A stretch of DNA of 64,000 nucleotides from Octopus sinensis (lineage: Eukaryota). The notes below the pieces were generated by a model. It was not told the DNA's origin. It did no database searches and was given only the letters and a program-made list of their open reading frames with translations. The DNA lies in contig NW_021833018.1 of assembly GCF_006345805.1 (NCBI RefSeq), positions 1-64,000 of the forward strand. The letters are read 5' to 3'. The number at the start of each line of letters is the position of its first letter. Position 1 is the stretch's first letter. A program made the translations under genes and the position numbers. Positions 4,591 through 49,233 of this stretch are shown here, piece by piece.

Positions 4591-5410
4591 AAATTGCTCT
4601 TTTTCCAAAAACTAAAGAGAAATCAAAAAATATCTTTTCTAAAAAAAGCATCCAGGTTGCTGTTGGAGATGATAAAGCAAGCGATCTTAAGAGGCACCTC
4701 TTTTCTCGGCAAACTCGTAGGATATTGAATGGTTGATCACAATGAGAGGAGATGGATCTATCTTGCGCGTAGCGCATAAGTACGCTGATATCGATGCAGT
4801 TATTTTATGAATTAATTTCGGGCATCTCGGGTTTATGGCAGATGTTCAAATCATCAATATCATCCTCTGACTGGAAGATTTAATTCACCGGCAGTTCACA
4901 TTTAAAAATAGAATAATGATCGAAGGAACATCTCAAAGTAAAAAGTCTTTCTTTTCCATAAAGAATTGTCTCCTACAACTAGTACACAATCCTATTATTA
5001 TTAAAATGGCAATTTATGTTATCTTTATCTGAATAGGCTTGAAGCTGATAGTGTCATTTTAGCAACCTTTAATATGTCAACAGCTTACTCTTTAAGTTGC
5101 CGGTAGTCCTATCTTAAGCCCTGATATTAATGCTTTTGTCTTAACTTCTATTTGTTTACATACCATTTCAAATCGTCCTTTCGTTCTTACACTAAACCGC
5201 AAAATTCAAAACGAGTATGTGAGTGAAAATGAGTCCATTGAAGTTTCTGCAATGGTCTCAACCGCTTTGAGCTAAAAACGGGAGAAACGATTAAAATCAG
5301 ACGCAGTCAAAAAAATTCAAACTCGTTAATTTAAACCACATTGACTTCTACTTTACTCTCCGAACAGAGCTCTGCTGATCCGGAAAGCTTCGTCAATCAA
5401 AGGAAATTGA
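4584..5410 (+). pseudogene. nadK: NAD kinase pseudogene (bacterial, directly after dxs)
   Basis: MKKIALFP.., ITMRGDGSILR (decayed GGDG), INFGHLGFMADV, EADSVILATFNMSTAYSL, HTISNRPFVL, FYFTLRTELCxSGKLR. Stops and frameshifts, no introns. Confidence 0.9.
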
Positions 5411-9940: not shown

Positions 9941-11936
9941 ATGTCAAGAAATGAAATTTTGGCTCCCTATATAGTTTATATCAAATATTAAAATTGTAAT
10001 AGACATTACTCAGACAACTTCGAAGAGTTGATTTGCAAAAACTTTGTCATTTTATTCATGCAAAGATTTCTGGAAATAAAAATGATCTGTTGCAACGAAT
10101 TTATGAGAATCTAGAAACAGTTTACAATCCCGAATTCCTGTCAGAAATCAAATTTATTTTTGAGTACACCAAATAACAAATTTTATTTTAGACATAGAGA
10201 TAATGCTTTATTCTCATTAAAAACGATATTTCCTACAGTAAAACATGCTTCCCCAATTGATTTGAATTCTCTTAAATTCGAAGATATTCCTTATTATGAA
10301 AACCTTCACACACTCTTATACCCAACTTTAATCAAGAATGGTAAACCTGCCATAATTATTTTAGGTGACAAAATATCTGACGGCGACTGCAGAAACGTGT
10401 TTACTTTTGCAGAGTCAATTTACAATACTTTCCCAGATTTAAAGTAATTGTTTTTTAACAAGTTATAAAATATGTTTACCAACTATATTTATTCAATATA
10501 AATAATTTTTGATATTTTATAACACAGATTTTTTGACTACATGGGATTCAGAACTGACATTCAAGTACAACTTAGGTTCAGTTTAAAATTAATAATTCTA
10601 GAATTGGCGTTTTGGAATCAAATGTTTTGCGTGATAAATATCCGTCAACTTTAACGTGTAAACTCAACTCAAAATCTGTCGATCTTCCAGTATTAAGTCG
10701 ATCTTTTATTTAGCCATACCTCCCTATCAAGCGACAAAACGACGTACAGAAACGTCCGCGGATTCCCGTTGATGTGACTATGGTGACAATCACACACCCA
10801 AATAGCACAAATTGTTTATTTGTCCGTAACAGTTCTAGCGAAAAAGTAATTTTTATATTCATTTTTAGGATCAATATTACGCGGGAATTTTTATTGTTAG
10901 AAAATTATTAGTCAGTGATTTAATAAACAAAATACAATCTCGATCTCCAATAACAACTGAACAGACTCGGAAATGGAGTTTGACCTAATAAACTGACTTT
11001 TCAGTCACTGAACGTCTTTCTGCAAACAATGAAACTGACGAACCTGTTGTGACTGATATATTCCTCTCTCTCCTATGTCCTGTTTCCATATTTTCATTTA
11101 CTCGTATAGATATCCCAGACTCGTTTGTCCCTTCCGGTCAGATCGACGCAATGTGACCACATTCAATGTTTTGATGCCCATACTTTTCTCACAATGAATG
11201 AGAAAAGACCTAATTGGCGTTGTCCGATCTGTTCTCGGCCTATGGACTTTTGCTACGTGAAGATTGACGAGTATCAGTCTTACTATATTATCCCATAAGA
11301 TACGTCTCCTTCATTTTAATGCAGACTAAAACTCACGTGAGATCTGTTGGGTTTGACGAGAATGGGCTTTGGCACTGTGTTTCAGATAAAGGGGAACCTG
11401 CTAGAGGTTATTTGCCATTGTTGATTTTTCTAGAAATTTTTGATACCACTGAACATAAAGAACCACTCCGATAACTGAGAGTGTGGTTAATATTTCGAAG
11501 GGCAGACGAGGTTATTGTCATTGAAGATTCTGACGATGAGGAAAAAGATAAAAATAATCTACAAGTTGAGAATGAACAGCCCTCCTTAGTCCTCATAGAA
11601 GGATCGGTACGTTCTCTTAATCAGGATATCCAAAATGAACCACATGTTCTACGACTTCCCTTATCTTCTAATAAGAGGCCTTGTTTAGACTCAATGAATA
11701 CTGTATTTAATGGAAGTAGCGACATTACTCATCGAGACATTCCGTTTAAAAACTCGGCTTTTAATAGCCAAGTGTTTCACCCGTTTGGTTCATCTCAGTC
11801 AGTGCCTCCTCGATTGTTCACAGTTTCTAATTATAATCAGCCATTCTTCCACGGATTGATCTTTCCAACTTCGATGTCAAATAATACTCCCCAAGGTGAT
11901 AGAAACATTTTTTTGGACAAGTTACCAAAATTATAA
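9941..11936 (+). CDS. PIAS: PIAS-family SUMO E3 ligase (SAP, PINIT, SP-RING, SIM)
   Basis: The spliced frame gives SAP (LRRVDLQKLC..SGNKNDLLQRI), PINIT (FEDIPYYENL..IQVQLR..KRPRIPVDVT), SP-RING (SLLCP|ISQTRLSLPVRSTQCDHIQCFD..NEKRPNWRCPIC) and a SIM/acidic patch (VIVIEDSDDEE). About 10 introns, mostly 23-30 nt. The junction at 11471-11500 is non-canonical. Confidence 0.93.
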
Positions 11937-12014
11937 CAATTAAATTTTTTTCTTCAATAAATTACATTTCAGTAATTTTTATTAATTTATTAAATTAATC
12001 ATTGTAACTTATAT

Positions 12015-14633: not shown

Positions 14634-17600
14634 TCTTAATAATAAAATGGTATGGTGTGTGTCTGTCTGTCTGTCTGGTGTGTGTCTGTCTGTCTGTCTG
14701 TCTGTGCACACCACATTCAAATTGTTACAAACCAGATCAAATTGTCAAAACCTTCCCTTTTGTAGTTATTCGATAATGAGGCACAATAAAGGTTGATATC
14801 CTCTAAGAACCTTCCTGTCAAAAAATTTTAATAAGAAAGAATATCCTCGATGATGAGGTCCCCCAAAACCTTCAAGTCAATTTTCTGCGTTTTTGTTAAA
14901 ATGAACAACAAGAAAGTCCTCGACTCACATGATGTGGTCCCCCAAAACCTTCAAGCCAAAAAATTAAAAAAAATTATTTTCTGCGTTTTTGTTAAAATGA
15001 ACAACAAGAAAGTCCTCGACTCACATGATGTGGTCCCCCAAAACCTTAAGCCAAAAAATTAAAAAAATTATTTTCTGCGTTTTTGTTAAAATGAACAACA
15101 AGAAAGTCCTCGACTCACATGATGTGGTCCCCCAAAACCTTCAAGCTAAAAAATTAAAAAAATTATTTTCTGCGTTTTTGTAAAATGAACAACAAGAAAG
15201 TCCTCGACTCACATGATGTGGTCCCCAAAACCTTCAAGCTAAAAAATTAAAAAAATTATTTCTGCGTTTTTGTTAAAATGAACAACAAGAAAGTCCTCGA
15301 CTCACATGATGTGGTCCCCCAAAACCTTCAAGCCCAAAAATTAAAAAAAATTATTTTCTGCGTTTTTGTTAAAATGAACAACAAAAAAGTCCTCGACTCA
15401 CATGATGTGGTCCCCCAAAACCTTCAAGCCAAAAAATAAAAAAATTATTTTCTGCGTTTTTGTTAAAATGAACAACAAGAAAGTCCTCGACTCACATGAT
15501 GTGGTCCCCCAAAACCTTCAAGCCAAAAATTAAAAAAAATTATTTTCTGCGTTTTTGTTAAAATGAACAACAAGAAAGTCCTCGACTCACATGATGTGGT
15601 CCCCCAAAACCTTCAAGCCAAAAAATTTAAAAAAATTATTTTCTGCGTTTTGTTAAAATGAACAACAAGAAAGTCCTCGACTCACATGATGTGGTCCCCA
15701 AAACCTTCAAGCTAAAAAATTAAAAAAATTATTTCTGCGTTTTGTTAAAATGAACAACAAGAAAGTCCTCGACTCACATGATGTGGTCCCCCAAAACCTT
15801 CAAGCCAAAAAATTAAAAAAAATTATTTTCTGCGTTTTTGTTAAAATGAACAACAAGAAAGTCCTCGACTCACATGATGTGGTCCCCCAAAACCTTCAAG
15901 CCAAAAAATTAAAAAAAATTATTTTCTGCGTTTTTGTTAAAATGAACAACAAGAAAGTCCTCGACTCACATGATGTGGTCCCCCAAAACCTTCAAGCCAA
16001 AAAATTAAAAAAAATTATTTTCTGCGTTTTTGTTAAAATGAACAACAAGAAAGTCCTCGACTCACATGATGGTCCCCCAAAACCTTCAAGCCAAAAAATT
16101 AAAAAAAATTTTTCTGCGTTTTGTTAAAATGAACAACAAGAAAGTCCTCGACTCACATGATGTGGTCCCCCAAAACCTTCAAGCCAAAAAATTAAAAAAA
16201 ATTATTTTCTGCGTTTTTGTTAAAATGAACAACAAGAAAGTCCTTGACTCACATGATGTGGTCCCCCAAAACCTTCAAGCTAAAAAATTAAAAAAATTAT
16301 TTTCTGCGTTTTTGTTAAAATGAACAACAAGAAAGTCCTCGACTCACATGATGTGGTCCCCCAAAACCTTCAAGCCAAAAAATAAAAAAATTATTTTCTG
16401 CGTTTTTGTTAAAATGAACAACAAGAAAGTCCTCGACACATGATGTGGTCACCCAAAACCTTCAAGCTAAAAAATTAAAAAAATTATTTTCTGCGTTTTT
16501 GTTAAAGATGACAACAAGAAAGTCCTCGACTCACATGATGTGGTCCCCCAAAACTTCAAGGTAAAAAATTAAAAAAATTATTTTCTGCGTTTTTGTTAAA
16601 ATGAACAACAAGAAAGTCCTCGACTCACATGATGTGGTCCCCAAAACCTTCAAGGTAAAAAATTAAAAAAATTATTTTCTGCGTTTTGTTAAAATGAACA
16701 ACAAGAAAGTCCTCGACTCACATGATGTGGTCCCCCAAAACTTTCAAGCCAAAAATTAAAAAAATTATTTTCTGCGTTTTTGTTAAAATAAACAACAAGA
16801 AAGTCCTCGACTCACATGATGTGGTCCCCCAAAACCTTCAAGCCAAAAAATTAAAAAAAATTATTTTCTGCGTTTTTGTTAAAATGAACAACAAAAAAGT
16901 CCTCGACTCACATGATGTGGTCCCCCAAAACCTTCAAGCCAAAAAATTAAAAAAAATTATTTTCTGCGTTTTTGTTAAAATGAACAACAAGAAAGTCCTC
17001 GACTCACATGATGTGGTCCCTCAAAACCTTCAAGCCAAAAAATTTAAAAAAATTATTTTCTGCGTTTTTGTTAAATGAACAACAAGAAAGTCCTCGACTC
17101 ACATGATGTGGTCCCCCAAAACTTCAAGCCCAAAAATTAAAAAAAATATTTTCTGCGTTTTTGTTAAAATGAACGACAAGAAAGTCCTCGACTCACATGA
17201 TGAGGTCCTCCACAACCTTCAAGCCTCGTGAGGCCATTAATTAGCTTAGCATCTTTTTTTTCGATGACATAAATTCTTTTTTGTTAAATTTTCGTTAAAA
17301 AAATAAAATAAAAGCTCTAATTGTTATCGACCATGAATAGACTGTGCAATTATCAGATTTTGAAAACCACTAAAAAGGAAAAAGCAAAAATTATTAGAGA
17401 TTTACATAATTGATTCTTTTTAACTGCCGAAACTGACAAATTCGATTATGCTACTGTTTAGATTTCTTAAAAGATAGAGGCAAATAAAATTTAAATTAGT
17501 CATGTAAATTTCAATTTGCCTATATTTAAATCTCCTTGATTTAACAGGCTTTAATTTTTTCCTTATAATACTACAAAGATGAAGCTGATTATCATTTTCT

Positions 17601-18868
17601 TACCGAAACAGACAAGTTCGATTATGCTAAAGTTTCAATTCCTTTAAACATAGAGGCAATTAAGTATAATGGCTTTGATTGGATAATACACTTTACATAA
17701 ATTTCACTAAATAATTTACGTAGAAAATTTAATATAAATTACTGATTCGCGTTTACAAAATCATAAGAATGTCCTATAAAGAGAGATCTGAGAATGTTAA
17801 CAAACAAGAGAATATGAACCATATAACAAAAAAAGAGAAACGAGGGAAGATGTGCTTAATGGTGAGGGAACTTAGACAACAGCTGAACAAGGTCAGGACT
17901 GCTGTTAGACTCAACTACGGGTAATAGAATTATGCATTCTAGGTTAATTGTTTGGGATGAATGTACGATGGCTCATAAAGGCGCATTCAAGCAGTTGACC
18001 GAACATATAGAGATATCAAGAATTGTAGCGACCATTTGTTTGGGGGAGCATTAGTTGTATTGGCAGGTGATTTTAGACAGACGCTGCCATTATTCAAAGA
18101 GGGACGCCGCGGATGAATTGAATGCCTGCCTCAAATCGTCATATTTGTGGACACACGTGAAAAAGGTAAGCTTAGATGTAAATGTACATGCACATTTACA
18201 AGGCGTTAATAGCATATTCCCACAAATCCTTCTAGATATTGGAAATGGGGCAATCACTTCAGAAATGCACGACCAGAAAATTAGGCTACCGGAAGAATTA
18301 TGTATTTTCGTAGAAACAGCAGAAGAATTATTGAATGCCGTCTATTCCGAACTATCTGAACACTACGTGAATTTCGACTGGCTGCGTGAACGAGCTATAT
18401 TAGCTCCACTTATGATGAGGTACTTAATATAAATTTAGATTTATTAATGAAAATCCCTGGCAGAGAAGAATATATAAATCGGTCGACGTTATTATGGACC
18501 ATGAAAGGGCCTGCGATAGATTTAAGAGACTACAATTTCCGCTGAAGATAAGTTTTGCTATGACAATAAACAAGGCCAGGGACAGTCTTTAAAGGTAGTA
18601 GGCTTATTTTTAGAGAACGAGTGCTTTTCACATGGCCAGCTGTATGTGGGGTGCTCAAGGGTAGGTAGAAGAGAAATTTATTTATATTGCCAAGGATGGA
18701 CGGACTGCAAACATCGTTTATCCACAGGCCTTAGAATAAGGTTATATCAAAGCAGGTCGCATTTATATATCTACATAAATTTATAGTTATTTAAGGAAAC
18801 TGCGAGCGTAGCGAGCAGGGCCTCCGCAGGAGCTAGCTCGCAGTGAGCGAAGCGAACTGCTGAGCTAG
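14634..18868 (+). mobile_element. Non-autonomous Helitron, copy A1
   Basis: A|TC 5' end, (CTGT)n microsatellite, 96-bp satellite, decayed PIF1 helicase motifs ([36 protein letters not shown]), a 3' GC-rich hairpin region and a CTAG terminus. Confidence 0.93.
14850..17225 (+). repeat. Tandem array of about 25 x 96-bp units inside Helitron A1
   Basis: Unit AAAATGAACAACAAGAAAGTCCTCGACTCACATGATGTGGTCCCCCAAAACCTTCAAGCCAAAAAATTAAAAAAAATTATTTTCTGCGTTTTTGTT. Variation is mostly homopolymer length. Confidence 0.98.
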
Positions 18869-21727
18869 TCTTAATAATAAAATGGTATGGTGTGTGTCTG
18901 TCTGTCTGTCTGTCTGTCTGTGCACACCCACATTCAAATTGTTACAAACCAGATCAATAAAAAAATTATTTTCTGCGTTGTTTTAAAATGAACAACAAGA
19001 AAGTCCTCGACTCACATGATGTGGTCCCCCAAAACCTTCAAGGTAAAAAATTAAAAAAATTATTTTCTGCGTTTTTGTTAAAATGAACAACAAGAAGTCT
19101 CGACTCACATGATGTGGTCTCCCAAAACTTTCAAGCCAAAAAATTAAAAAAATTATTTTCTGCGTTTTTGTTAAAATAAACAACAAGAAAGTCCTCGACT
19201 CACATGATGTGGTCCCCCAAAACCTTCAAGCCAAAAAATTAAAAAAATTATTTTCTGCGTTTTTGTTAAAATGAACAACAAGAAAGTCCTCGACTCACAT
19301 GATGTGGTCCCCCAAAACCTTCAAGCCAAAAAATTAAAAAAATTATTTTCTGCGTTTTTGTTAAAATGAACAACAAGAAAGTCCTCGACTCACATGATGT
19401 GGTCCCCCAAAACCTTCAAGCCAAAAAATAAAAAAATTATTTTCTGCGTTTTTGTTAAAATGAACAACAAGAAAGTCCTCGACTCACATGATGTGGTCCC
19501 TCAAAACCTTCAAGCCAAAAAATTAAAAAAAATATTTTCTGCGTTTTTGTTAAAATGAACAACAAGAAGTCCTCGACTCACATGATGTGTCCCTCAAAAC
19601 CTTCAAGCCAAAAAATTAAAAAAAATTATTTTCTGGTTTTGTTAAATGAACAACAAGAAAGTCCTCGACTCACATGATGTGGTCCCCCAAAACCTTCAAG
19701 CCCAAAAATTAAAAAAAATATTTTCTGCGTTTTTGTTAAAATGAACGACAAGAAAGTCCTCGACTCACATGATGTGGTTTCTCAAAACCTTCAAGCCAAA
19801 AAATTAAAAAAATTATTTTCTGCGTTTTTGTTAAATGAACAACAAGAAAGTCCTCGACTCACATGATGTGGTCCCTCAAAACCTTCAAGCCAAAAAATTT
19901 AAAAAAAATTATTTCTGCGTTTTGTTAAATGAACAACAAGAAAGTCCTCGACTCACATGATGTGGTCCCCCAAAACCTTCAAGCCCAAAAATTAAAAAAA
20001 AATATTTTCTGCGTTTTTGTTAAAATGAACGACAAGAAGTCCTCGACTCACATGATGAGGTCCTCCACAACCTTCAAGCCTCGTGAGGCCATTAATTAGC
20101 TTAGCTATCTTTTTTCGATGACATAAATTCTTTTTTGTTAAATTTTCGTTAAAAAAATAAAATAAAAGCTCTAATTGTTATCGACCATGAATAGACTGTG
20201 CAATTATCAGATTTTGAAAACCACTAAAAAGGAAAAAGCAAAAATTATTAGAGATTTACATAATTGATTCTTTTTAACTGCCGAAACTGACCAATTCGAT
20301 TATGCTACTGTTTAGATTTCTTAAAAGATAGAGGCAAATAAAATTTAAATTAGTCATGTAAATTTCAATTTGCCTATATTTAAATCTCCTTGATTTAACA
20401 GGCTTTAATTTTTTCCTTATAATACTACAAAGATGAAGCTGATTATCATTTTCTTTACCGAAACAGACAAGTTCGATTATGCTAAAGTTTCAATTCCTTT
20501 AAACATAGAGGCAATTAAGTATAATGGCTTTGATTGGATAATAACATTTACATAAATTTCACTAAATAAATTTACGTAGAAAATTTAATATAAATTACTG
20601 ATTCGCGTTTACAAAATCATAAGCATGTCCTATAAAGAGAGATCTGAGAATGTTAACAAACAAGAGAATATGAACCATATAACAAAAAAAGAGAAACGAG
20701 GGAAGATGTGCTTAAATGGTGAGGGAACTTAGACAACAGCTGAACAAGGTCAGGACTGCTGTTAGACTCAACTACGGGTAATAGAATTATGCATTCTAGG
20801 TTAATTGTTTGGGTGAATGTACGATGGCTCATAAAGGCGCATTCAAGCAGTTGACCGAACAATAGAGATATCAAGAATTGTAGCGACCATTTGTTGGGGG
20901 AGCATTAGTTGTATTGGCAGGTGATTTTAGACAGACGCTGCCAATTATTCAAAGAGGGCGCCTGCGGATGAATTGAATGCCTGCCTCAAATCGTCATATT
21001 TGTGGACACACGTGAAAAAGGTAAGCTTAGATGTAAATGTACATGCACATTTACAAGGCGTTAATAGCATATTCCCACAAATCCTCTAGATATTGGAAAT
21101 GGGGCAATCACTTCTGAAATGCACGACCAAAAAATTAGGCTACCGGAAGAATTATGTATTTTCGTAGAAACCAGCAGAAGAATTATTGAATGCCGTCTAT
21201 TCCAAACTATCTGAACACTACGTGAATTTCGACTGGCTGCGTGAACGAGCTATATTAGCTTCACTTAATGATGAGGTACTTAATATAAATTTAGATTTAT
21301 TAATGAAAATCCCTGGCAGAGAAAGAATATATAAATCGGTCGACGTTATTATGGACCATGAAAGGGCCTGCGATAGATTTAAGAGACTACAATTTCCGCT
21401 GAAGATAAGTTTTGCTATGACAATAAACAAGGCCCAGGGACAGTCTTTAAAGGTAGTAGGCTTATTTTTAGAGAACGAGTGCTTTTCACATGGCCAGCTG
21501 TATGTGGGGTGCTCAAGGGTAGGTAGAAGAGAAATTTATTTATATTTGCCAAGGATGGACGGACTGCAAACATCGTTTATCCACAGGCCTTAGAATAAGG
21601 TTATATCAAAGCAGGTCGCATTTATATATCTACATAAATTTATAGTTATTTAAGGAAACTGCGAGCGTAGCGAGCAGGGCCTCCGCAGGAGCTAGCTCGC
21701 AGTGAGCGAAGCAAACTGCTGAGCTAG
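18869..21727 (+). mobile_element. Non-autonomous Helitron, copy A2, head-to-tail with A1
   Basis: Junction GAGCTAG|TCTTAATAATAAAATGG at 18868/18869. It ends CTAG|T at 21727 and is near-identical to A1, with fewer satellite units and a 5' internal deletion. Confidence 0.93.
18955..20085 (+). repeat. Tandem array of about 12 x 96-bp units inside Helitron A2
   Basis: Same unit as 14850-17225. Confidence 0.97.
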
Positions 21728-22031: not shown

Positions 22032-25000
22032 CAGTCCGACCCCCAAATGGGGCACCAAGTGCCCCAAAATGCGGGGGTGCCCCAAAAACAGGGGTTTGTT
22101 ATTTTTTTAAAAATTAAACCATTAATAAACATCAAAAAACATTTTTACTAAAATATTCAGTTATTTTCTTTTTATTTGTAGAGTTTTGTCTGATATTGTT
22201 CGTCAATTTCAGCCGAAAATCAAAAAAATCTCGGAGCATACTTGGTGCAACATTAGAAATTTTTCTTCTAAATTGTTAAGCAGATCTTTTGTTTTTGCTA
22301 CGACATTTTCACTATTTTCGGTTTCTGAATATGTATCATAAACATTATTGTTCATGTCTTCGCATTCTCCATCAATTGTTTCGTTAACAACTTGATCTAA
22401 ATGTTCATCTGTTAGACAGTTTTTTGTTGCATAAGAATCACGGTTCCTGTCGATTTTCTTCCAACAATTAACAATACTTTTAGCATCTATTTTCTCCCAT
22501 CCTTTTGAAATTAGCATCATAACCTGACGCAAATTTAATTTACCAATAGAATGTGTAAAATCGTTTTCGAAATCTTGAAAACATAAAAATTCCATTAAGA
22601 AAGAGGAATAATAATCTTTAAAAATCTTGATTATTCCCATATCCAAAGGTTGTAAATAGGGCGTTGTATTTTTCGGCAAAAATAAAAATTCGATGTTCGA
22701 ACATTCGGCAGTTTTATGGCATCCCGCATTGTCAAGTACAGTACCGCTCAAATGTTTCGGACCACCCTATTTTTCTCAATTTCCAAGTCAATCCTAAATT
22801 ATTTTTATACGGTTCTTTAGAGAAACTTATTAGATAAGCTTAAATACATTTATTCTATTCTAAAATTTTCTTTAAATATTTTTGTTTGGCGCCAATTGAA
22901 TATAATTGATTTTTGACTCGATCATATGTTCCGGACCAGTTGCAATCATATGTTTCGAACCAGTTAAATCTCTTTAAATTTAAATAATTTTTGATTCAAT
23001 TAAAAACAAAAGACTAAAAATAACAAATGCCGCGTGTTTCACTGGTTGATCGGGTCGCTATCATCACTTTTTTTAAAGATGGAGCTTCACAAAGAGAAAT
23101 TGCCGAAAAATTAAAAATATCCAAAACTGCTGTTCAAAGAACAATTTCCAGATATTCATCCGTTGGACTATATTCCGACAGACCCAAATCTGGTCGACCG
23201 AGATTGTTATCCCCAAGATCTGAACGCAAATTAGTGAGAATTTCGAAAGCAGACCCCACAAAAACGGCAAATCAAATTAAATTGATATGAAATTAAATTC
23301 TATTGTAAGCACAAATACAATTAAAAGATGCCTACAAAGAAATAATTTGAATGGGCGAAAGCAATGCCAAAACCAAGTCTTTCCATATGCCATAAAAAGG
23401 CTAGAAAAAATTGGTGCATTGAGAAATTAACTTGGAGCCAAAATGATTGGGGTAAAATTATTTTTAGTGATGAATGCAAAATAAATTTGCATTCAAACAC
23501 AAAAAATTATGTTAGAAGGCCACCAAACTCTAGATTTGACTCAAAATATTGTTTAAAAACACGAAAATTTTCTCCTAGCATTATGGTCTGGGGAGCTATT
23601 GCTGCAAATGGATGGAGAAACATTGTCTTATGCATTAAAAATGTTGATTCCGCAGAGTATCAGAGAATTATAAATGTTGGACTCGAAAATTTTTATGATG
23701 AGACCATGTATCTCCAGCAAGACGGCGCTCCTTCCCATCGGTCCATGTCGACAATGAATTTTTTTCAAAGGAAACAAATAAAAATCTTAGAAACTTGGCC
23801 GAGCCAGTCACCCGAACTGAATATTATTGAAAATATGTGGTCGGTACTAAAACAAAACTTTATGATCTGGAACCAAAAGATCTTCCAGAGCTCTGGAATT
23901 TGACCAAAAAATTTGGTACGAGATTGATAATTCGTACATTGAAAAATTATACAATTCACTTCCAGAGCGAATAAATGCTGTTATAACGAACAACGGAGGA
24001 AATATTAATTATTAACTTTTTATAAGTTTAATAAATTTTCGGTTTTTTTTAAACTGGTCCGGAACATATGATCGAGTATAAAATCGATAATTTTAAAATT
24101 GCGCCAAACATGAATATCTGTCCAAGTTTTTAAAATAGAATAAATGTGTTTAAGCTTATCTAATAAGTTTCTCTAAAGAACCGTATAAAAATAATTTAGG
24201 ATTGACTTGGAAATTGAGAAAAATAGGGTGGTCCGAAACATTTGAGCGGTACTGTATTAATAATATTTTTCTGTTGTTTTTTGCAAAACGATTCATTTAT
24301 AAGTGTAAGCCAACTCATAAAAGTCTTTCCAGTCATCCATGCATTTTGAGAAGATGAATACAATAACCCAAAATCTTGAACATCAAAATTTTTTAGACAC
24401 CGAGGTTTTTTATATTTTCCAATAATCAATGGATTAAGTTTTTCCCCGATTAAACTGCAGCATAGAAGAACAGTGAGTCTTTCTTTCCCTTGTTTATAAC
24501 CAAAACACGGTTCGCCTTGTTCAACAAATGATTTTTGAGGAGTTCTTTTTATAAAAAAGCGCAGTTTCATCACAATTAAATATATTCTCAGGTCCATTTT
24601 TAATACTTTCTGGTCATATTTTTCAATAATTTTTCACATAAGATAAATCACATGAAGCTTTTTCACCACATATTGACTTGAATTGAAGTTCATGCCGCAA
24701 TTTAAATCTATCAAGCCACCCATTGGAAGCTTTAAAAGAAGTAAATCCAATTTTTGAAGCTGTAACTAAGGCAATTTTTTAAAATAGGGCCTGAAATCGG
24801 AATTTTATCTACGCGTAGTCTTTGAAATATTTCAAAGACTTGATCATCAAATTTATCTTTATCGGCTTTAAATGTGTCATATTCCTCAGAAATAGTATTG
24901 CCGTGTTGCAAGAAAGGTACAATATTTCGTTTTATTCTTGATATTGTTCCTTTACTTGTGTTGTACTTTTTCATTAGTTGCCTCTCAGATAAATTTTTCT

Positions 25001-25287
25001 TCAAAATTTCTTTAGCAATCTTCAATTTAGTTTCGTAATCCATAACCACAACAATAAAAATATAAATTGAAAATAAAACAAAAAATAATTAATTATTATA
25101 ATTTTATTTTATTTTTAATTCCTTATAAATGATTTTATGGTGCCCCAAAAATTCCATAATTTTTTATCGATTTTTATTTTTTTTCTGCCAAAATGTACTT
25201 TTGGAATAAAGTGCCCCAATTGCGGGGGTGCCCCAAAATCGAGGGTGCCCCACCCCTGGGGTCTGCCCCATTTTGGGGGTCGGACTG
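22032..25287 (-). mobile_element. Full-length decayed pogo/Tigger DNA transposon
   Basis: TIRs CAGTCCGACCCCC with TA on both flanks. HTH-psq/CENP-B region (24732-25049), KERLTVLLCC, NAWMT, then VLDNAGCH..LPKNTTPYLQPLDMGII on the far side of the nested Tc1. Confidence 0.92.
22739..24254 (+). mobile_element. Tc1 (DD34E) transposon nested in pogo
   Basis: TIRs of about 200 bp starting CAGTACCGCTCAAATGTTTCGGACCA, with an inner repeat (ATATGTTCCGGACCA) and TA TSD. The transposase shows paired-like HTH, FSDECK, QQDGAPSH, WPSQSPELNIIENMW, with a few stops/frameshifts. Confidence 0.95.
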
Positions 25288-25430
25288 TATTCGTTTCTAA
25301 AGATCATTAAATGTGATAGTAAGATTCGTAAATTTTTCTTAAACTTAATTTTTTATAATAATTCATTAATGATTTATTTAAAAATGTTTTAAATAATAAT
25401 TGTGTTATAGTTGTAAATGTTTTATCCAAA

Positions 25431-26801
25431 ATGTTCTCTTCAATCCAGAAAAAAAAGAAATGGGATTAATAGATTTCGATATATCGAAATGCTTATCGAA
25501 GAATTTAAATTCAATAAATCATATAGTTTGACATTTTTAAACAAATTGAACAATTTTTAGAATCACGCTCCCAAATCGTTGCAAATCTTGCAAATTTTGC
25601 ATATGATCCGTTAAATTTTAACATATTAAACAAATTAAACGTAGTCAAACTTGGTACTTTTGTCGAAGTGGTCGCAGTTTTTTTAGGCCTTTTAAAAAAT
25701 CTACTAATTTTTGAGGTGGAATATATTATATTATTTAAGTCGCTCTATCAATAATTTAAAATTATTAAATTTTTTACTAATTATTTTCTAATTTTTTTAA
25801 TATTATGGCGAGCATGTACCTAATATTGATATAAACTGGCACTATAGGTCACATGGAAAATTCTGTTGTGGACTTATGCAACATCAAATTCCGACAGCTC
25901 CCAATAAGTAAGGAGGATGCAGTGCATTTTCTGCAAAATTATTCAGAAAATTCTTTGTGGATCCAACGACGGGAGTGCACACCCAGACAGTAGAACGAAT
26001 GTGGGGAAGTGCCAAATGCAAGAATAAAGCTCAAGAGGAGCTGTAAGACATCATCTGGGATCTTATTCGCAGGTTTTTAGTTAGTTATTTTTTCAGAATT
26101 TATGTGGCGAAAACAAATACAGAACTATAAGGAATCTTTTGCACAGATTGTAAAAGACATAAATTCCTTCTACAGTCCTGGAATTTGGATGCCGCGTACT
26201 AAAAATGACTAAATTGGTTAAATAAATTTTTTTAAATATTTAATAACCATTTAAATTATTGATAGAGGGTTATAAATTAAATAATCTATTTTTCACTAAA
26301 AAAATTAATTAATTTTAATTATCTTCTAAAAAAATGCGACCACTTCGACAAAAGTACCACTTTTTCTAGGTTTTGTAGCTTCAGGGTTTATTTTATAGAC
26401 ATACTTTCCAACACCAATTCGATTAAAGAAATAGAGTTTGCGAGCGCCGGAATCTGCAATCTTGTTTGCGGTTAATAATTTATTTTAAATAACATCACAG
26501 ATACATTTTTTAGAGATCAAGTCATTTCCTTTTCAGGAATGGAAATATTGACTAATTTGCTTGAAAATAACTTTAACGAGACGGTGTTGACTAACGTAAT
26601 GGCATCTATAATATACCTTGCAGGTGAAGACACTCGGCAACGTTGATATTATGTTTTTTTATATCTAGATATATCTTCTAGAGTTGCCGAATATTTTATG
26701 AAACTAAAAGATCATCACTTCATTTCGATTCGGAATTTAGCGATCATTTTTTTGCAGGTTTACGACTTTACTTCATTTTTTAGGATTTTTGTAATCAATA
26801 G
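25431..26801 (+). CDS. ARMC7: Armadillo repeat-containing protein 7, interrupted by a Merlin element
   Basis: Spliced: NGINRFRYIEMLIEEF..QIVANLANFAYDPLNF..VKL[Merlin]FL|DILS..EFASAGICNLVC|D..NETVLTNVMASIIYL..IRNLAIIFLQ|DFCNQ*. ANLANFAYDP, EFAxxGxCNL and RNLAxIFLxDFC are ARMC7 signatures. There is one frameshift in an A-run near 25450. Confidence 0.88.
25653..26358 (+). mobile_element. Non-autonomous Merlin (IS1016-like) element, copy 1
   Basis: TIRs GGTACTTTTGTCGAAGTGGTCGCA. Transposase N- and C-terminal remnants (FVDPTTGVHTQTVERMWGSAK..EFMWR) are joined by a deletion. Only 4 bp (ACTT) are duplicated at the target. Confidence 0.88.
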
Positions 26802-32424: not shown

Positions 32425-34499
32425 CTAGCTCGGCAGCTCGCTTCGCTCACCGCGACCTAGCTCCTGCGGAGGGCCTGTTTCATCAAACAACTATAAGTTT
32501 ATGTAGATGTATAAAACTACCTGGTTTAATGTAACCCTATTCTATCGCCTGTTGATAAACGATGTTTGTCGTCCGTCCTTCCGTGGCATATATGAATAAA
32601 TTTTCTCTTCTGCCTACCCTCGAGCATCCCACATACAGCTGTCCATGTGAAAAGCACTCACTCTCTAAAAATAACCCAACTACCTTTAATGACTGTCCCT
32701 GGGCCTTGTTTATTGTCATTGCAAAACTCATCCTCAAAGGAAATTGCAGCCTTTTAAATCTAAATGGTAATTCATCAGAAATTATCGGAATTCGTGGAAT
32801 ATAAACATCCTCACCTCTATACTTACCTGTTCATATCGTCGCCTCTATTACGTTAGGCATCAAATTTTTGAGAACTAACCCCGTTCCGTTGCATAATTTA
32901 GGTGGCGCAAGATTTCGTAATAAAACCACTGGAACGCCTATCTTTAACTTTAAAAGATGATTCGGCATTCCAGAGGGATCTAAGGAGTTTAAAAATTCAA
33001 TCCGGTTGAATTTTTAGAAAATAACAAAAAAATAAAGAAAAACAAATAAAAATAAATAATTTAAAAACAAAAAAATAAAAAAAACAAAAAAAAACTTTAA
33101 AAATTTGTAAAATAGTATAAACAAACAAAATCTCTGCCGCCACGGCAACAACCAGTCTAATTTTTTAACAGCCAATTAAGATAATGCTTAAGAGCCTTTA
33201 TAGTACGGAGATTTAGCTTAGTGACCTTGATTAGACAAACCACTGGCGGAAATGGGGCAGCCGGAGATGCGGCAGGCAGAGTAGCAGCAGCCAAAAAAGC
33301 GACACACAAAAAAGATTTAATTAATTACCTTAAGCTGACCGTTTTTTCTTCAGCTTCGTTTTTCCTCCTTCGGTTATCTATTTAAAAAATTATTTTTCAA
33401 TAATAAAAAAGTTTAGGAAAAGAGGCATACCGAAAATAAATTCTATCTTTACGAAAAACTTAACTAAATAGTTAATATTTTTACGCAAATTCTTCTGATT
33501 GCGCTGTCAATTGGTGGTAAATTGTGTTAATAATTGTGCTAATGTGGTTTTAACTATCAAAGTGTTTTTCAAAATCTGTTAATTGCACACTCTATTCAAG
33601 GTCGTGCAATCTGTAATTGCACATTCTGTCAAAGTCAAATATGATAATAGCTTTAATTTTGATTCATGGTCGATAATGATATATGCATTTAATTTTAAAG
33701 AGAAAATCATAGGATGAATTGAATTTCTTTATCGCGAATAATTGGGAGTTCATCATTGTTAATATTCTCGCTGTCGTTTTCATCAAGGATATTCTTAATA
33801 CGTTAGATTTTTGCCTCGAAGGTTTTAATGGACCTCATCATGAATGTCGAGGACATTAACGTTGTTCATTTTAATCAAATGCAGAAAATAATTTTTTGAT
33901 TTTTTGGCGGGAAGGTTTTAAGGACCTCATCATGTAAGTCGAGGACATCGTAGTTGTTCATTTTAACCAAAATGCAGAAAATTTTTTTTTAATTTTTTTT
34001 TGGGGGAGAAGGTTTTAAAAACTTCATCATGTAAGTCGAGGACATCGTAGTTGTTCATTTTAACCAAAATGCAGAAAACTTTTTTTTTAATTTTTTTTGG
34101 GGGGAAGGTTTTAAGGACTTCATCATGTAAGTCGAGGACATCGTAGTTGTTCATTTTAACCAAAATGCAGAAAATTTTTTTTTAATTTTTTTTTGGGGGG
34201 AAGGTTTTAAGGACTTCATCATGTAAGTCGAGGACATTGTAGTTGTTCATTTTAACCAAAATGCAGAAAATTTTTTTTTAATTTTTTTTGGGGGGAAGGT
34301 TTTAAGGACTTCATCATGTAAGTCGAGGACATTGTAGTTGTTCATTTTAACCAAAATGCAGAAAATTTTTTTTTAATTTTTTTTGGGGGGAAGGTTTTAA
34401 GGACCTCATCATGTAAGTCGAGGACATCGTATTGCCAATTTGAAGTTGGTGTGCACACACAGACAGACAGACACACACCATACCATTTTATTATTAAGA
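32425..34499 (-). mobile_element. Non-autonomous Helitron, subfamily B
   Basis: Same A|TCTTAATAATAAAATGGTATGG 5' end and CTAG|T 3' end as the A copies. Helicase C-terminus ([42 protein letters not shown]) and a diverged satellite. Confidence 0.9.
33780..34430 (-). repeat. About 7 units of a diverged ~94-bp satellite inside Helitron B
   Basis: Unit AAAATGAACAACTACGATGTCCTCGACTTACATGATGAAGTCCTTAAAACCTTCCCCC.., homologous to the A unit but with shared diagnostic differences. Confidence 0.92.
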
Positions 34500-36000: not shown

Positions 36001-36439
36001 TTAAATTAATTTACTAATCTAACTTATTTTATGATTTTATGACGGAATTTTTGCTATTTTTAATGAATTTTGTGTCCACAAGAAATAATTACAGGCCTCG
36101 ATTGGTGTCACATAGAAACTTTAAGGCTTAGTTTGCTATGCCAGGCTTTCCTCATTATAGCACATGTATGGCCTTAAAGAACAATCACAAATTTTTCTCA
36201 CTAGTCAAACAACTATATGGATGACAAATAAATTTAACTAAACAAATTACTCCACCAATCAACAATAGTCATGCACCACTACCCAAAACATCAAGCTATC
36301 AGTCTGTCAATTCTTATCGTGATCAGTTTTTTTGCGTTGAGTCAAATTGATCCGATAGCTCCAGTTTTGGTGGTGGTCTTATGTCAATTCTTTTAAATTT
36401 GAGCTTTGCAACTATATTCCTTAAAACCCCAAAGATGGT

Positions 36440-37080
36440 TGCAGAAGAAAAGGGAATTGCTGGTTTGCAGTTTGGCTTGCAGAAGAAAAGGGAATTGTTG
36501 TTTTAAGACTCCTGATGCCGTATCGAATGCCACGGCGGATCATACATTTGCCATTTTCTTAGGATTACTGCGAAAAGTATCTGAAGGGCAAACCTATGAT
36601 AGAGAAAACAAATGGATGGGCTGGGATCCTTAGCATTTTTTAGGAAAAGGCTTACCAGGAAAAACATTTGGCATTATCGGCTGTGGTGGGTTTGAAAGGT
36701 TGCTGTTCGTCGAGCAGTTAAACTTGATCTCAATGTCATTTGTTATCATTACCGTAAAAATTGATGCTAGGGTTCGTGAGTTGAGCAAAGTTTCTTAGAA
36801 AGAAATGCTCGAGACAGTTGATTAACCCTCTCTTTATTTTCCATTAACGAAAAAAACGCGAGGGATGATTAATTATGAAGCGATTTAACAAATAAAAAAA
36901 AGCCTAACATCAACATAGCTCAGAGTCCCATCATTAAAACAAATGATTTGGTACCTGCACTAAAAAAAAACCTGCTAGGTGGAGCACCTTTAGATGTGAC
37001 AGATCTTGGACCTTTGTTAGGAGATTATCATCCTCTTTGTCATTTAGAAAACTTTTTAGTTCTACCTCATATTGCTTTGA
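36440..37080 (+). pseudogene. D-isomer-specific 2-hydroxyacid dehydrogenase (glyoxylate/glycerate reductase-like) pseudogene, intronless
   Basis: KTPDAVSNATADHTF, WMGWDP.HFLGKGLPGKTFGIIGCG (Rossmann), FPLTKKTRGMIN, INIAQSPII, GGAPLDV, ENFLVLPHI. Many stops and frameshifts. Confidence 0.85.
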
Positions 37081-37089
37081 GACTCAAAC

Positions 37090-47859: not shown

Positions 47860-49233
47860 GATTGAACAACCAAATTTTTTGTCGAGTGGTGTATTCGACA
47901 ATTAAGCAATAGAGAGGGCAATACACTCGAACTGCAGGGAAAATCTGTGCAGGAAATACCTAAGAAAAAAGAAAGGTACTTTTGTCGAAGTGTCGCAGTT
48001 TTTTTAGAAGATAATTAAAATTAATTAATTTTTTAGTGAAAAATAGATTATTTAATTTATAACCCTCTATCAATAATTTAAATGGTTATTAAAATTATTT
48101 AAAATTTATTTAACCAATTTAGTCATTTTTAGTACGCGGCATCCAAATTCCAGGACTGTAGAAGGAATTTATGTCTTTTACAATCTGTGCAAAAGATTCC
48201 TTATAGTTCTGTATTTGTTTTCGCCACATAAATTCTGAAAAAATAACTAACTAAAAAACCTGCGAAATAAGATCCCAGATGATGTCTTACAGCTCCTCTT
48301 TGAGCTTTATTCTTGCATTTTGCACTTCCCCACATTCGTTCTACTGTCTGGGTGTGCACTCCCGTCGATGGATCCACAAAAATTCTGAATATATTATATT
48401 TCCTTACTTATGGTTAACGGTTCGTGTGTGTAGCCGTTTTCAACCAATTGATCAGTTGAATACCCTAAATGTTAATCAAATAATGCGGCAATCTACAATT
48501 CTCTAACCAGGTATCTAGAATTATTTGAGAGAAATTATACCTTTTTTAATAGAACATTGGACTCTACAACCAACTCTTGAGCATTTCCAATTGAGCTTCG
48601 GTCCCAGACTAATTCCATCTGATGTCCCTTCGGACATATACGTGATTTTGAAAGGATATCCACATTTTGCAGAAAATGCACTGCATCCTCCTTACTTATT
48701 GGGAGCTGTCGGAATTTGATGTTGCATAAGTCCACAACAGAATTTTCCATGTGACCTATAGTGCCAGTTTATATCAATATTAGGTACATGCTCGCCATAA
48801 TATTAAAAAAAATAGAAAATAAATTAGTAAAAAATTTAATAATATTTTAAATTATTGATAGAGCGACTTAAATAAAATATAATATATTCCACCTCAAAAA
48901 TTATTAGATTTTTTAAAAGGCCTAAAAAAACTGCGACCACTTCGACAAAAGTACCAAAAGAAACGTAAACTTGACCACGTTCACCCATATCCTGGTCATG
49001 GAAGTGTGCATCACGTACCTAGGTCGTTTGCAGACAGTAAAAGTACAGAAAAAAAGTATGAAAGTATCTCATTTGATGCTTGCCTATTTAGTCCTCTCCT
49101 AACATTTAGTCAGCGAGAGGCGCTGGAATGCACTTTCTCGAAGGTCTACAATGCCAGAGAAAAGGAGGAAGAAAAGAAGGCGATGCGTGGAGTGCCATCC
49201 TCTGTTCATTTTGAGGGGTCTAGACTTAGTTAG
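47860..49233 (+). pseudogene. Unidentified ORF interrupted by Merlin copy 2
   Basis: Removing the element and one TSD restores IERAIHSNCRENLCRKYLRKKK|RKLDHVHPYPGHGSVHHVPRS..SRLS*. Confidence 0.4.
47975..48955 (-). mobile_element. Non-autonomous Merlin element, copy 2 (longer)
   Basis: Same TIRs as copy 1 and a perfect 8-bp TSD AAAAGAAA (47967-74, 48956-63). It retains the extra N-terminal CPKGH zinc-finger segment that copy 1 lacks. Confidence 0.92.

What the first reader, a model, noticed from the sequence alone, without database searches (positions are those of the whole stretch)
25640..26400. Merlin insertion in an ARMC7 exon can be spliced out in frame via its own TIR
Seen: the TIR starts G|GTACTT in phase 1 after ..GTC AAA CTT. 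The native 29-nt intron just downstream (26370-26398) is also phase 1. Splicing 25654-26398 gives VKL-D-ILS instead of VKLFL-D-ILS, a loss of only two residues. A GTAC donor is already used in PIAS intron 2, and the rest of ARMC7 shows no stops. Inference: an intronised transposon, meaning this family's TIR could generate or extend introns. The 745-nt length would be extreme for this genome. The same route fails for copy 2, where the nearest acceptor leads to a stop.
Basis: partly seen in the sequence, partly recalled or inferred. Interest (0 to 1): 0.7.

Follow-up and report, generated by a model that had tools for sequence, protein, structure and literature searches.

The report
Young Merlin transposon interrupting ARMC7 exon
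A recently inserted 706-bp Merlin-type DNA transposon sits inside a conserved exon of an otherwise intact ARMC7 (minor-spliceosome) gene; it could be removed from the RNA in frame by one route, but nothing in the sequence shows this happens, so for now it is an ordinary gene-breaking insertion that makes a good RT-PCR test case.

Summary
A 706-bp non-autonomous element (25653-26358) with perfect 24-bp TIRs lies in exon 2 of a six-exon ARMC7 gene. It belongs to the Merlin/IS1595 superfamily: its ORF remnant hits 134 proteins, and all 10 tested carry PF12762. A second copy has the expected 8-bp TSD.

GT at 25654 joined to the native acceptor at 26398 gives a stop-free 162-aa ORF lacking Phe-Leu. 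Of 70 GT..AG pairs spanning the element, only this one and a very weak TIR-internal one are in frame.

The inference "intronised transposon" has no positive support.
- Phase matching is a 1-in-3 event.
- The element is young, so the intact ORF may simply not have decayed yet.
- The lost residues sit in a short helix that never varies in length in 121 homologues.
- 745 nt is nine times the longest of 14 introns modelled here (23-84 nt).
- The left TIR contains a native-looking 33-nt GT...TTTTTTTAG unit that leads to a stop.
- In the full transcript the donor is buried in a 25-bp TIR duplex.

That duplex is the known trigger of spliceosome-independent "SOS splicing", a rival route. No RNA or genome data for this organism could be reached.

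The parts
25417..25525 (+). ARMC7 exon 1 (ATG at 25417)
   Evidence: Gene model translated. It aligns with Hydra ARMC7.
25526..25560 (+). ARMC7 intron 1, 35 nt, phase 1 (GTTTGA...TTTAG)
25561..25652 (+). ARMC7 exon 2, part left of the insertion (...ANLANFAYDPLNFNILNKLNVVKL)
   Evidence: tblastn with Hydra ARMC7 gives 67% identity over 25563-25652.
25653..26358 (+). Merlin/IS1595-type non-autonomous element, copy 1, 706 bp. The transposase remnant is in the same orientation as ARMC7.
   Evidence: TIRs. It is 97% identical to copy 2. The ORF remnant matches the C-terminal end of the PF12762 domain in its database hits.
25653..25676 (+). Left TIR (24 nt, perfect). The inverted repeat extends imperfectly to about 140 nt at about 77%.
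26335..26358 (-). Right TIR (24 nt, perfect)
25654..25659 (+). Candidate 5' splice site GTACTT inside the left TIR (phase 1)
   Evidence: It scores 2.8 bits, against -1.7 to 5.7 for 14 modelled donors in leave-one-out scoring. It is fully base-paired in the folded transcript.
25654..25686 (+). Cryptic 33-nt intron look-alike within the TIR: GTACTTTTGTCGAAGTGGTCGCAGTTTTTTTAG
   Evidence: Its length and T-rich TAG end match the native introns, and the acceptor scores 5.0 bits. Removing it still ends at the stop inside the element, giving an 89-aa product.
25649..25652 (+). Left copy of the 4-nt direct repeat ACTT (in place of the expected 8-bp TSD)
   Evidence: The ancestral exon is inferred from 121 homologues.
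26359..26362 (+). Right copy of the 4-nt direct repeat ACTT
26363..26369 (+). ARMC7 exon 2, remaining part right of the insertion (TTT CTA G = Phe, Leu and the first base of Asp)
26370..26398 (+). Native ARMC7 intron 2, 29 nt, phase 1.
   Evidence: It is the best-scoring acceptor in the gene.
26399..26801 (+). ARMC7 exons 3-6: exons at 26399-26470, 26516-26623, 26669-26757 and 26784-26801; introns of 45, 45 and 26 nt; TAG stop at 26799-26801
   Evidence: The boundaries of introns 3 and 4 are less certain, because the alignment to Hydra has 5- and 7-residue gaps next to them.
47975..48955 (-). Merlin element copy 2, 981 bp, opposite orientation, flanked by the 8-bp TSD AAAAGAAA (47967-47974 and 48956-48963). 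It is nested among other transposon fragments.
10164..10191 (+).
   Evidence: Frame logic and the PIAS model, which carries SAP, PINIT and zf-MIZ domains. It is not covered by the alignment to solved PIAS structures.

Best explanation
A young, non-autonomous Merlin (IS1595-superfamily) cut-and-paste transposon has landed in exon 2 of ARMC7. It lies inside the codons for a short, strictly conserved armadillo-repeat helix.

On this haplotype the default transcript is broken. Read through, it meets a stop 33 codons into the element. If the 33-nt intron look-alike in the left TIR is spliced, it meets the same stop and gives an 89-aa product.

The remainder of the gene looks intact because too little time has passed for decay. 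The insertion may be polymorphic or heterozygous.

In-frame removal at the RNA level is arithmetically possible but not evidenced. Even if it occurred, the product would probably be impaired.

Shown here: the insertion, its family, its youth, the gene model, the frames and the conservation. Inferred: the fate of the transcript.
For: - **TIRs:** perfect 24/24, with chance expectation 0.
- **Youth:** 97.3% identity to copy 2 over 704 aligned nt.
- **Family:** Merlin/IS1595. Copy 2 has an 8-bp TSD.
- **Premature stops:** the unspliced reading stops after ...VVKL+33 codons. After removal of the 33-, 39- or 62-nt cryptic introns, products are 74-89 aa.
- **Intron length:** native introns modelled here are 23-84 nt, median 28, n=14. 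The only animals reported with such introns are myxobolid myxozoans and a dicyemid, whose splice signals are reduced to about GTa...AG (PMC13644364).
- **The TIR's own look-alike:** the 33-nt TIR unit has donor and acceptor scores inside the native range.
- **Buried donor:** in the full transcript the donor and that proximal acceptor lie in a 25+10-bp duplex. P(unpaired) is 0.00, the arm duplex is -96.6 kcal/mol, and the fold z-score is -9.35.
- **Conservation at the site:** F 119/121, L 106/121 (the rest mostly M or I), D 121/121, and segment length invariant in 121/121. The segment is an 8-residue helix in a pLDDT-91 model.
- **Possible early termination:** AATAAA motifs lie inside the element on the sense strand, at 26023 and 26221.
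Against: - **The ORF and splice sites are intact.** All five GT..AG pairs and the whole ORF survive. If the insertion were as old as the split between the two copies, a neutral 495-nt CDS would be expected to carry several frameshifts. The copies differ by 10 indel events and 19 substitutions in 704 nt, which gives about 3.5 indels per 495 nt per lineage. This is a rough upper bound, and homopolymer indels may be assembly noise. So the insertion is either much younger than that split, or the gene is still under selection.
- **An in-frame route exists.** Exactly one reasonably scoring in-frame route is available, and it uses the TIR's own GT.
- **The TIR hairpin is a known excision trigger.** It is the pattern that triggers SOS excision of exonic transposons in C. 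elegans and human cells (PMC12779559).
- **Longer introns exist in these genomes.** Introns over 100 bp do occur in ultra-short-intron animals.
Confidence: 0.55

Rival explanations
1. The major spliceosome uses the TIR's G|GTACTT (25654) as a donor and the native intron-2 acceptor (26398). This removes 745 nt: the element, the 11 exon bases to its right and the old 29-nt intron. The result is an in-frame ARMC7 lacking Phe-Leu, so the transposon has in effect extended an intron.
For: - The product is in frame and stop-free, 162 aa.
- It is the only well-scoring route among 70 GT..AG pairs spanning the element.
- The donor score of 2.8 bits lies inside the native range, and the acceptor is the strongest in the gene.
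- Donors in this genome are degenerate (GTT, GTA, GTG and GTC are all seen) and include a probable GTAC.
- TIR pairing would bring position 25654 to within about 40 nt of the acceptor in space.
- Introns over 100 bp exist in such genomes.
- The rest of the gene is intact.
Against: - There are no transcript data.
- The phase match has a 1/3 chance.
- 745 nt is nine times the longest of 14 modelled introns.
- Nearer acceptors at 33 and 62 nt have native-like scores and lead to stops.
- The donor is fully paired in the complete transcript.
- The product deletes two near-invariant residues from a length-invariant 8-residue helix.
- Removal is not precise, unlike true introners.
- The only other copy in the window is not in a gene.
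Confidence: 0.12
2. Hairpin-triggered, spliceosome-independent excision (SOS splicing). The base-paired TIRs are recognised in the mRNA and the element is cut out at variable sites in or near the TIRs. The ends are then rejoined by RTCB. Only a fraction of the products are in frame.
For: - The element is exonic and has perfect 24-nt TIRs, extended to about 35 bp with one bulge and further imperfectly.
- A very stable hairpin is predicted: z = -9.35, arm duplex -96.6 kcal/mol.
- In C. elegans and human cells, ITR pairing is necessary and sufficient. Tc1, Tc3, Tc4 and HSMAR2 are excised, and Tc1 is removed from 90-100% of host mRNAs. Excision sites are rarely GU-AG (PMC12779559).
Against: - It is unknown whether this organism has AKAP17A, CAAP1 and SUT-2, or whether the system exists outside nematodes and mammals.
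- In that study, rescue failed when the insertion lay in a conserved domain. This site is highly conserved.
- If the 33-nt TIR unit is spliced co-transcriptionally, the left arm of the hairpin is destroyed. This is inference.
Confidence: 0.18
3. The gene was already dispensable and is decaying. ARMC7 is a minor (U12-type) spliceosome protein. If this ultra-short-intron lineage has lost U12 splicing, an insertion in ARMC7 would be neutral and needs no rescue.
For: - ARMC7 is chain K of PDB 7dvq. The RBM48/ARMC7 dimer binds the U6atac cap in the minor Bact complex (PMC11874965).
- The window's protein keeps only 37 of 60 columns that are at least 90% conserved in 120 homologues, all of which keep at least 53.
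Against: - The ORF and all splice sites are intact, and the core motifs ANLANFAYDP and LFLD are retained. This fits a fast-evolving but functional gene until very recently.
- The state of U12 snRNAs and U12 introns in this organism is unknown. None was found in the window.
Confidence: 0.1

Closest known systems
Removal of Tc1/Tc3/Tc4 from C. elegans mRNAs: Rushforth & Anderson 1996 'Splicing removes the C. elegans transposon Tc1 from most mutant pre-mRNAs', now explained as SOS splicing (Zhao et al., Nature 2025, PMC12779559)
   Same: A cut-and-paste DNA transposon with base-pairing terminal inverted repeats lies in a coding exon. Removal is imprecise, leaving a small deletion or insertion, and only some products are in frame.
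   Different: In those cases removal is demonstrated by RNA sequencing and is mostly not at GU-AG sites. Here nothing is demonstrated, the proposed sites are GT-AG, and the host is an ultra-short-intron animal whose SOS factors are unknown.
Maize Ds/dSpm elements spliced from exons (Wessler and colleagues, 1987-1991; cited from my own knowledge, see also PMC5395267)
   Same: A splice donor inside the element's terminus is paired with an acceptor in or beyond the element. The resulting transcripts lack the transposon, carry a small in-frame change, and may retain partial gene function.
   Different: The maize cases involve plant hAT and CACTA elements in genomes with long introns, and were shown by cDNA. 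Here the intron would be about 25 times the typical host intron.
Introners: transposons that create introns on insertion (Micromonas, Aureococcus, dinoflagellates and others; PMC9860276, PMC12130899, review PMC11282704)
   Same: A TIR-bearing DNA transposon supplies a splice site at its end and uses host sequence for the other.
   Different: Introners are defined by many copies sitting as precisely spliced introns, often co-opting the TSD so that the ORF is restored exactly. Here there is one genic copy, removal would be imprecise (minus 2 or plus 3 codons), and a canonical 8-bp TSD would make TIR-to-TIR removal frameshifting (13 nt left behind). 'Merlin' and 'IS1595' do not occur in the main text of the 2025 survey.
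MITE-derived non-canonical introns of Fritillaria borealis (reviewed in PMC11282704)
   Same: TIR pairing brings the intron ends together, and the introns originate from exonic MITE insertions in a compact animal genome.
   Different: Those introns have non-canonical ends and are removed by an adapted spliceosome, which has been shown experimentally.
Merlin superfamily (Feschotte 2004, from my own knowledge; Pfam PF12762 DDE_Tnp_IS1595)
   Same: An IS1595/ISXO2-like DDE transposase remnant, TIRs, and an 8-bp TSD at copy 2.
   Different: Both copies are internally deleted and frameshifted, so they are non-autonomous. Copy 1 shows only a 4-nt duplication.

Membership tests
Merlin / IS1595-superfamily DNA transposon | Encodes, or derives from an element encoding, an IS1595/ISXO2-like DDE transposase | tested here: met
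   The ORF piece window:48204-48407(-) hits 134 proteins at E<=1e-3 (best 3.6e-18). All 10 hits scanned carry PF12762 above its cut-off, and the hits' matched stretches lie at the C-terminal end of that domain. Named relatives are 'DDE_Tnp_IS1595 / ISXO2-like transposase domain-containing' proteins. Pfam on the short pieces themselves found nothing.
Merlin / IS1595-superfamily DNA transposon | Terminal inverted repeats | tested here: met
   24/24 perfect TIRs. The inverted repeat extends to 37 nt at 92% and about 140 nt at 77%.
Merlin / IS1595-superfamily DNA transposon | 8-9 bp target-site duplication | tested here: inconclusive
   Copy 2 has an 8-bp AAAAGAAA duplication on both sides. Copy 1 has only a 4-nt ACTT duplication.
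Spliceosomal intron derived from a transposon (intronised TE / introner) | Removed from the mature mRNA | not testable with these tools
   No transcript or protein of this organism is present in the databases searched.
Spliceosomal intron derived from a transposon (intronised TE / introner) | GT...AG boundaries that keep the reading frame open | tested here: met
   25654-26398 gives a 162-aa stop-free ORF. Only 2 of 70 spanning GT..AG pairs do so.
Spliceosomal intron derived from a transposon (intronised TE / introner) | Length and signals compatible with the host's introns | tested here: not met
   745 nt compares with 23-84 nt (median 28) for 14 modelled introns. The donor score is acceptable, but nearer acceptors at 33 and 62 nt compete. 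The donor is fully paired in the fold.
Spliceosomal intron derived from a transposon (intronised TE / introner) | Several copies of the family sit as introns in different genes | tested here: inconclusive
   Only two copies are in the window, and the other one lies among TE fragments.
Spliceosomal intron derived from a transposon (intronised TE / introner) | Removal restores the original coding sequence (element plus one TSD) | tested here: not met
   The routes either delete Phe-Leu or insert Val-Pro-Leu. With a canonical 8-bp TSD, TIR-to-TIR removal would leave 13 nt; this is arithmetic.
SOS-splicing substrate | Exonic DNA transposon whose inverted terminal repeats can base-pair in the mRNA | tested here: met
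   The MFE structure pairs 25652-25676 with 26335-26359 and continues to 25687/26325. The fold z-score is -9.35 and the arm duplex is -96.6 kcal/mol.
SOS-splicing substrate | Host encodes AKAP17A, CAAP1 and RTCB, and excised RNAs exist | not testable with these tools
   The genome and transcriptome of the organism were not available.
ARMC7 (armadillo repeat-containing protein 7) | Full-length similarity to ARMC7 orthologues, including the ANLANFAYDP and LFLD motifs | tested here: met
   Hydra ARMC7 is hit at E 9.8e-25, 39% identity and 99% coverage. Supported by the alignments. The Hydra protein matches PDB 7dvq_K, human ARMC7, at 4e-57.
ARMC7 (armadillo repeat-containing protein 7) | Pfam armadillo-repeat domain above threshold | tested here: not met
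   Only a weak ARM_ARMC5 hit: E 7e-4, 19.4 bits against a cut-off of 79.9. This is expected for a very divergent 164-aa protein.

The most novel reading that the evidence does not exclude
In an animal whose spliceosome normally handles about 23-45-nt introns with minimal signals, a Merlin family acts as a proto-introner. Its palindromic terminus GGTAC...GTACC supplies a 5' splice site. Its TIR hairpin folds 700 nt out of the way, so that this site lies about 40 nt from a pre-existing acceptor. The transposon plus the old intron would then be removed as one intron, keeping a minor-spliceosome gene alive. This would be a first case of transposon-driven intron extension in a myxozoan- or dicyemid-type genome. 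The odd 4-nt rather than 8-nt duplication, which also puts the TIR-to-TIR route in frame, would then be a selected secondary change.
Probability: 0.1. Interest if true: 0.65.

Novelty: new member of a known kind. Interest (0 to 1): 0.32.

Why it matters
If cDNA showed the element being removed, this locus would be a natural experiment on two questions.

- How does a spliceosome tuned to ultra-short, signal-poor introns cope with a 745-nt insert?
- Does hairpin-triggered (SOS-type) transposon excision exist in a non-bilaterian or mesozoan parasite?

It would also show a route by which DNA transposons lengthen introns. As the evidence stands, it documents an active or recently active Merlin family, and probably a null or hypomorphic allele of a minor-spliceosome gene. 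That is useful for annotation but not surprising.

Tried and rejected
**Classifying the element**
- Pfam on five short ORF pieces of the element gave no hit, even at E<=10. Classification was obtained instead through the exhaustive representative search and Pfam on its hits.

**Looking for the organism's own proteins or transcripts**
- The ARMC7 splice model found only Hydra ARMC7 (39%) and one metagenomic protein.
- The 886-aa LINE ORF had a best hit of 42%.
- The organism is therefore absent from the protein collection, and no spliced or unspliced ARMC7 ORF could be recovered.

**Exact-match scans**
- An ARMC7 exon-2 30-mer and the 24-nt TIR against metagenome contigs, and the TIR against viral contigs, all gave 0 hits.
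- So there was no empty allele and no family survey.

**Other leads that went nowhere**
- The contigs encoding P0002 are intron-free metagenome scaffolds from an unrelated eukaryote and were not informative.
- The cluster look-up of the nearest transposase relatives named arthropod proteins only, giving no clue to the host taxon.
- There is no second ARMC7 copy and no fuller Merlin copy in the window.
- Modelling the 2-hydroxyacid-dehydrogenase-like and DXS-like genes to enlarge the intron sample was abandoned. The frames are too broken for confident boundaries.

**Ideas considered and rejected**
- Skipping of exon 2 would be in frame by my count of phases in the model (99 nt in the empty-site version). 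It removes the most conserved 33 residues.
- An acceptor at 26369 (CTAG|) would leave a zero-length exon before the native donor.
- The 8-bp TSD hidden by point mutations: only 2 of 8 positions match.

**Caveat on the scoring**
- The position-weight scoring rests on only 14 introns and is a rough guide, not a predictor.
Full report
**What is there**

The window is AT-rich (29-46% GC) and crowded with animal-type transposons: LINE, mariner, pogo, hAT, MULE, integrase-bearing and Helitron-like ORFs. At 25653-25676 (+) and 26335-26358 (-) lie two perfect copies of GGTACTTTTGTCGAAGTGGTCGCA. A third copy at 48932-48955 marks a second element, and none is expected by chance. Copy 1 is 706 bp. Copy 2 (47975-48955) is 981 bp, inverted, and 97.3% identical over the 704 shared positions, with 10 small indel events. 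The inverted repeat continues imperfectly for about 140 nt.

**Family**

Pfam sees nothing in the short, frameshifted ORF pieces. A 68-residue piece of copy 2 finds 134 proteins at E<=1e-3 in the exhaustive representative library. All ten hits scanned carry PF12762 (DDE_Tnp_IS1595, the ISXO2-like transposase domain), and their matched stretches fall at its C-terminal end. Named relatives are annotated accordingly. Copy 2 is flanked by an 8-bp duplication, AAAAGAAA.

**The host gene**

A six-exon model (25417-26801) with introns of 35, 29, 45, 45 and 26 nt gives a 164-aa protein once the two flanks are joined. It matches Hydra ARMC7 over 99% of its length (39% identity, E 1e-24). It also retains the ANLANFAYDP and LFLD motifs.

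ARMC7 is chain K of PDB 7dvq. It is the partner of RBM48 that binds the U6atac cap in the activated minor spliceosome (PMC11874965). The interrupted gene is therefore itself a splicing factor.

The protein is unusually divergent. It keeps 37 of 60 columns that are at least 90% conserved in 120 homologues, all of which keep at least 53. Its best matches are medusozoan cnidarians.

Taken with the tiny introns, this suggests a myxobolid myxozoan, with a dicyemid as the alternative. These are the only animals reported with median introns below 30 nt and with splice signals reduced to about GTa...AG (PMC13644364). The taxon assignment is an inference. The organism is absent from the searchable collections.

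The left flank ends GTC AAA CTT, and the TIR begins G|GTACTT, so a donor at 25654 is phase 1. The native 29-nt intron (26370-26398) is also phase 1. Joining 25653 to 26399 gives ...NVVKL-D-ILS... and an open 162-aa frame.

I enumerated all 70 GT..AG pairs that span the element. Only two are in frame and stop-free, and both use donor 25654. The other goes to AG 26354 inside the right TIR, adds Val-Pro-Leu, and has a very poor acceptor at -9.1 bits.

**Why the inference does not follow**

1. **Phase match is weak evidence.** Matching phase with the next intron has a 1-in-3 chance.

2. **'No other stops' says little.** The TIRs are perfect and the two copies differ by under 3%, so the insertion may be very recent. 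Conversely, suppose it were as old as the split between the copies. The indel density between them would then predict roughly 3.5 frameshifts in a neutral 495-nt CDS. This is a rough upper bound, and homopolymer indels may be assembly noise. The intact ORF therefore means either a very recent insertion or continued selection, and one locus cannot separate these.

3. **The site is one of the most constrained in the protein.** In 121 homologues the segment NVVKLFLDILS never varies in length. F is present in 119, L in 106 (the rest mostly M or I), and D in all 121. In a pLDDT-91 model of the Hydra protein, VVDLFLDM is an 8-residue helix. Deleting FL, or inserting VPL, would be expected to damage it. 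In the SOS-splicing study, rescue failed for insertions in conserved domains.

4. **Length.** Fourteen introns were modelled here. Five are in ARMC7. Nine are in PIAS, and six of those are checked by a near-gapless alignment to human PIAS2/3. They measure 23-84 nt with a median of 28, against 745 nt for the proposed intron. Longer introns do exist in such genomes, so this is a handicap rather than an exclusion.

5. **Competition from nearer acceptors.** The left TIR contains GTACTTTTGTCGAAGTGGTCGCAGTTTTTTTAG, a 33-nt unit. Its donor scores 2.8 bits, its acceptor 5.0 bits, its last 12 nt before the TAG contain 7 T's, and it ends in TAG. All of these fall inside the native range. Removing it, or the 39- and 62-nt alternatives, still ends at a stop inside the element, giving 74-89-aa products.

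6. **Structure.** Once the right TIR is transcribed, 25652-25676 pairs perfectly with 26335-26359, and the helix continues to 25687/26325. The donor has P(unpaired)=0.00, the arm duplex is -96.6 kcal/mol, and the whole-region fold has z = -9.35. The donor is available only in the nascent transcript, which is exactly when the nearby acceptors are the ones present. That last point is inference.

7. **Possible early termination.** The element carries AATAAA on the sense strand just after its transposase remnant, at 26221. This could end transcripts before the native acceptor is made. This too is inference.

The same hairpin is the pattern that triggers SOS splicing. This is a spliceosome-independent excision of exonic DNA transposons that requires AKAP17A, CAAP1 and RTCB. 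It has been shown in C. elegans (Tc1, Tc3, Tc4) and in human cells (HSMAR2). It cuts at variable, mostly non-GU-AG sites near the ITRs and leaves small indels (PMC12779559). If this organism has that system, the element may well be removed, though not via its GT and not necessarily in frame.

**An unexplained detail**

Copy 1 lacks the 8-bp TSD. Because the homologues fix the uninterrupted exon as GTC AAA CTT TTT CTA G, the net duplication is only ACTT. That implies a 4-nt loss next to the element, or a non-canonical integration.

One consequence is that TIR-to-TIR removal would leave 9 nt, which is in frame. With a canonical TSD it would leave 13 nt. This could be chance (1 in 3) or a selected secondary change. 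It cannot be decided from one locus.

**The PIAS precedent and copy 2**

PIAS intron 2 (10164-10191) with a GTACAC donor fits the frame and the domain content. The solved-structure alignment does not reach that region. By my reading, a GT at 10140 also keeps the frame. The donors modelled here are degenerate in any case: GTT in 8, GTA in 4, GTG in 1 and GTC in 1. Copy 2 sits among LINE and mariner fragments, not in a gene, so its 'failure' is uninformative.

**Comparison with known systems**

The proposal works like the classic removal of Ds/dSpm from maize exons and of Tc1 from C. elegans mRNAs. It also resembles introners and the MITE-derived introns of Fritillaria.

It does not meet the introner definition. 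Removal would be imprecise, a canonical TSD would frameshift TIR-to-TIR removal, and only one genic copy is known. As an element it is a new member of the Merlin superfamily. As a phenomenon it is an exonic transposon insertion whose RNA fate is unknown.

**Verdict**

The most likely reading (0.55) is a recent, possibly polymorphic, gene-disrupting insertion. Interest is modest until cDNA across 25600-26450 is examined.

Noticed in passing
window 25649-25652 / 26359-26362 versus 47967-47974 / 48956-48963: Copy 1 of the Merlin element has only a 4-nt flanking duplication (ACTT), while copy 2 has the canonical 8-bp TSD (AAAAGAAA). This implies a 4-nt loss at the junction or an atypical integration. 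It happens to make TIR-to-TIR removal in frame.
   Followed up: partly
window 25417-26801: The interrupted gene, ARMC7, is a minor-spliceosome (U12-type) protein (PDB 7dvq chain K; it forms a dimer with RBM48 that binds the U6atac cap). It is unusually divergent here, keeping 37 of 60 highly conserved columns. It is unknown whether this ultra-short-intron lineage still has U12 splicing.
   Followed up: partly
window 26354-26398: The right TIR also offers a GT (AAAA|GTACCA). With the native acceptor it forms a 45-nt cryptic intron that scores as well as true introns (16.7 in the crude model), so it would compete with the native donor at 26370.
   Followed up: partly
window 14880-17225, 18958-20080, 33818-34431: A 96-bp satellite forms three arrays (24.8, 11.9 and 6.4 copies, 94-95% matches; the third is on the opposite strand). 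They lie next to Helitron/Pif1-helicase-like ORF fragments at 18055-18783, 21168-21590 and 32540-32830.
   Followed up: partly
window 55635-58295 (-): An 886-aa LINE ORF (endonuclease plus reverse transcriptase; best database relative only 42% identical) carries a 2A-like 'DIEQNPGP' motif near its N-terminus.
   Followed up: no
window ~3118-4733 (+): Fragments of a DXP-synthase-like gene hit Pfam DXP_synthase_N (5e-9), Transket_pyr (3e-6) and Transketolase_C (2e-3). They are spread over several frames. This is unexpected in an animal genome and could be a horizontally acquired gene, a pseudogene, or a hint that the taxon guess is wrong.
   Followed up: partly
window 36074-36362 (-): An isolated fragment resembling eukaryotic SSU rRNA scores 51.3 bits, just above the Rfam threshold, and covers model positions 1178-1604. 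It lies just upstream of a degenerate 2-hydroxyacid-dehydrogenase-like gene (36403-37103).
   Followed up: no
window 22212-25290 and 27010 onward: ARMC7 is boxed in by other transposons. A pogo/Tigger-like element ends about 130 nt upstream of the ATG, with a G-rich terminus at about 25150-25290. A hAT-like element starts about 210 nt after the stop (CAGGTGTTCTCAACC...).
   Followed up: no
window 9941-11940 (+): A PIAS-type SUMO ligase gene (SAP, PINIT and zf-MIZ domains) has introns of 23-84 nt. Six of the junctions are confirmed by a near-gapless alignment to human PIAS2/3. Introns of 23-24 nt are among the shortest described in animals.
   Followed up: yes
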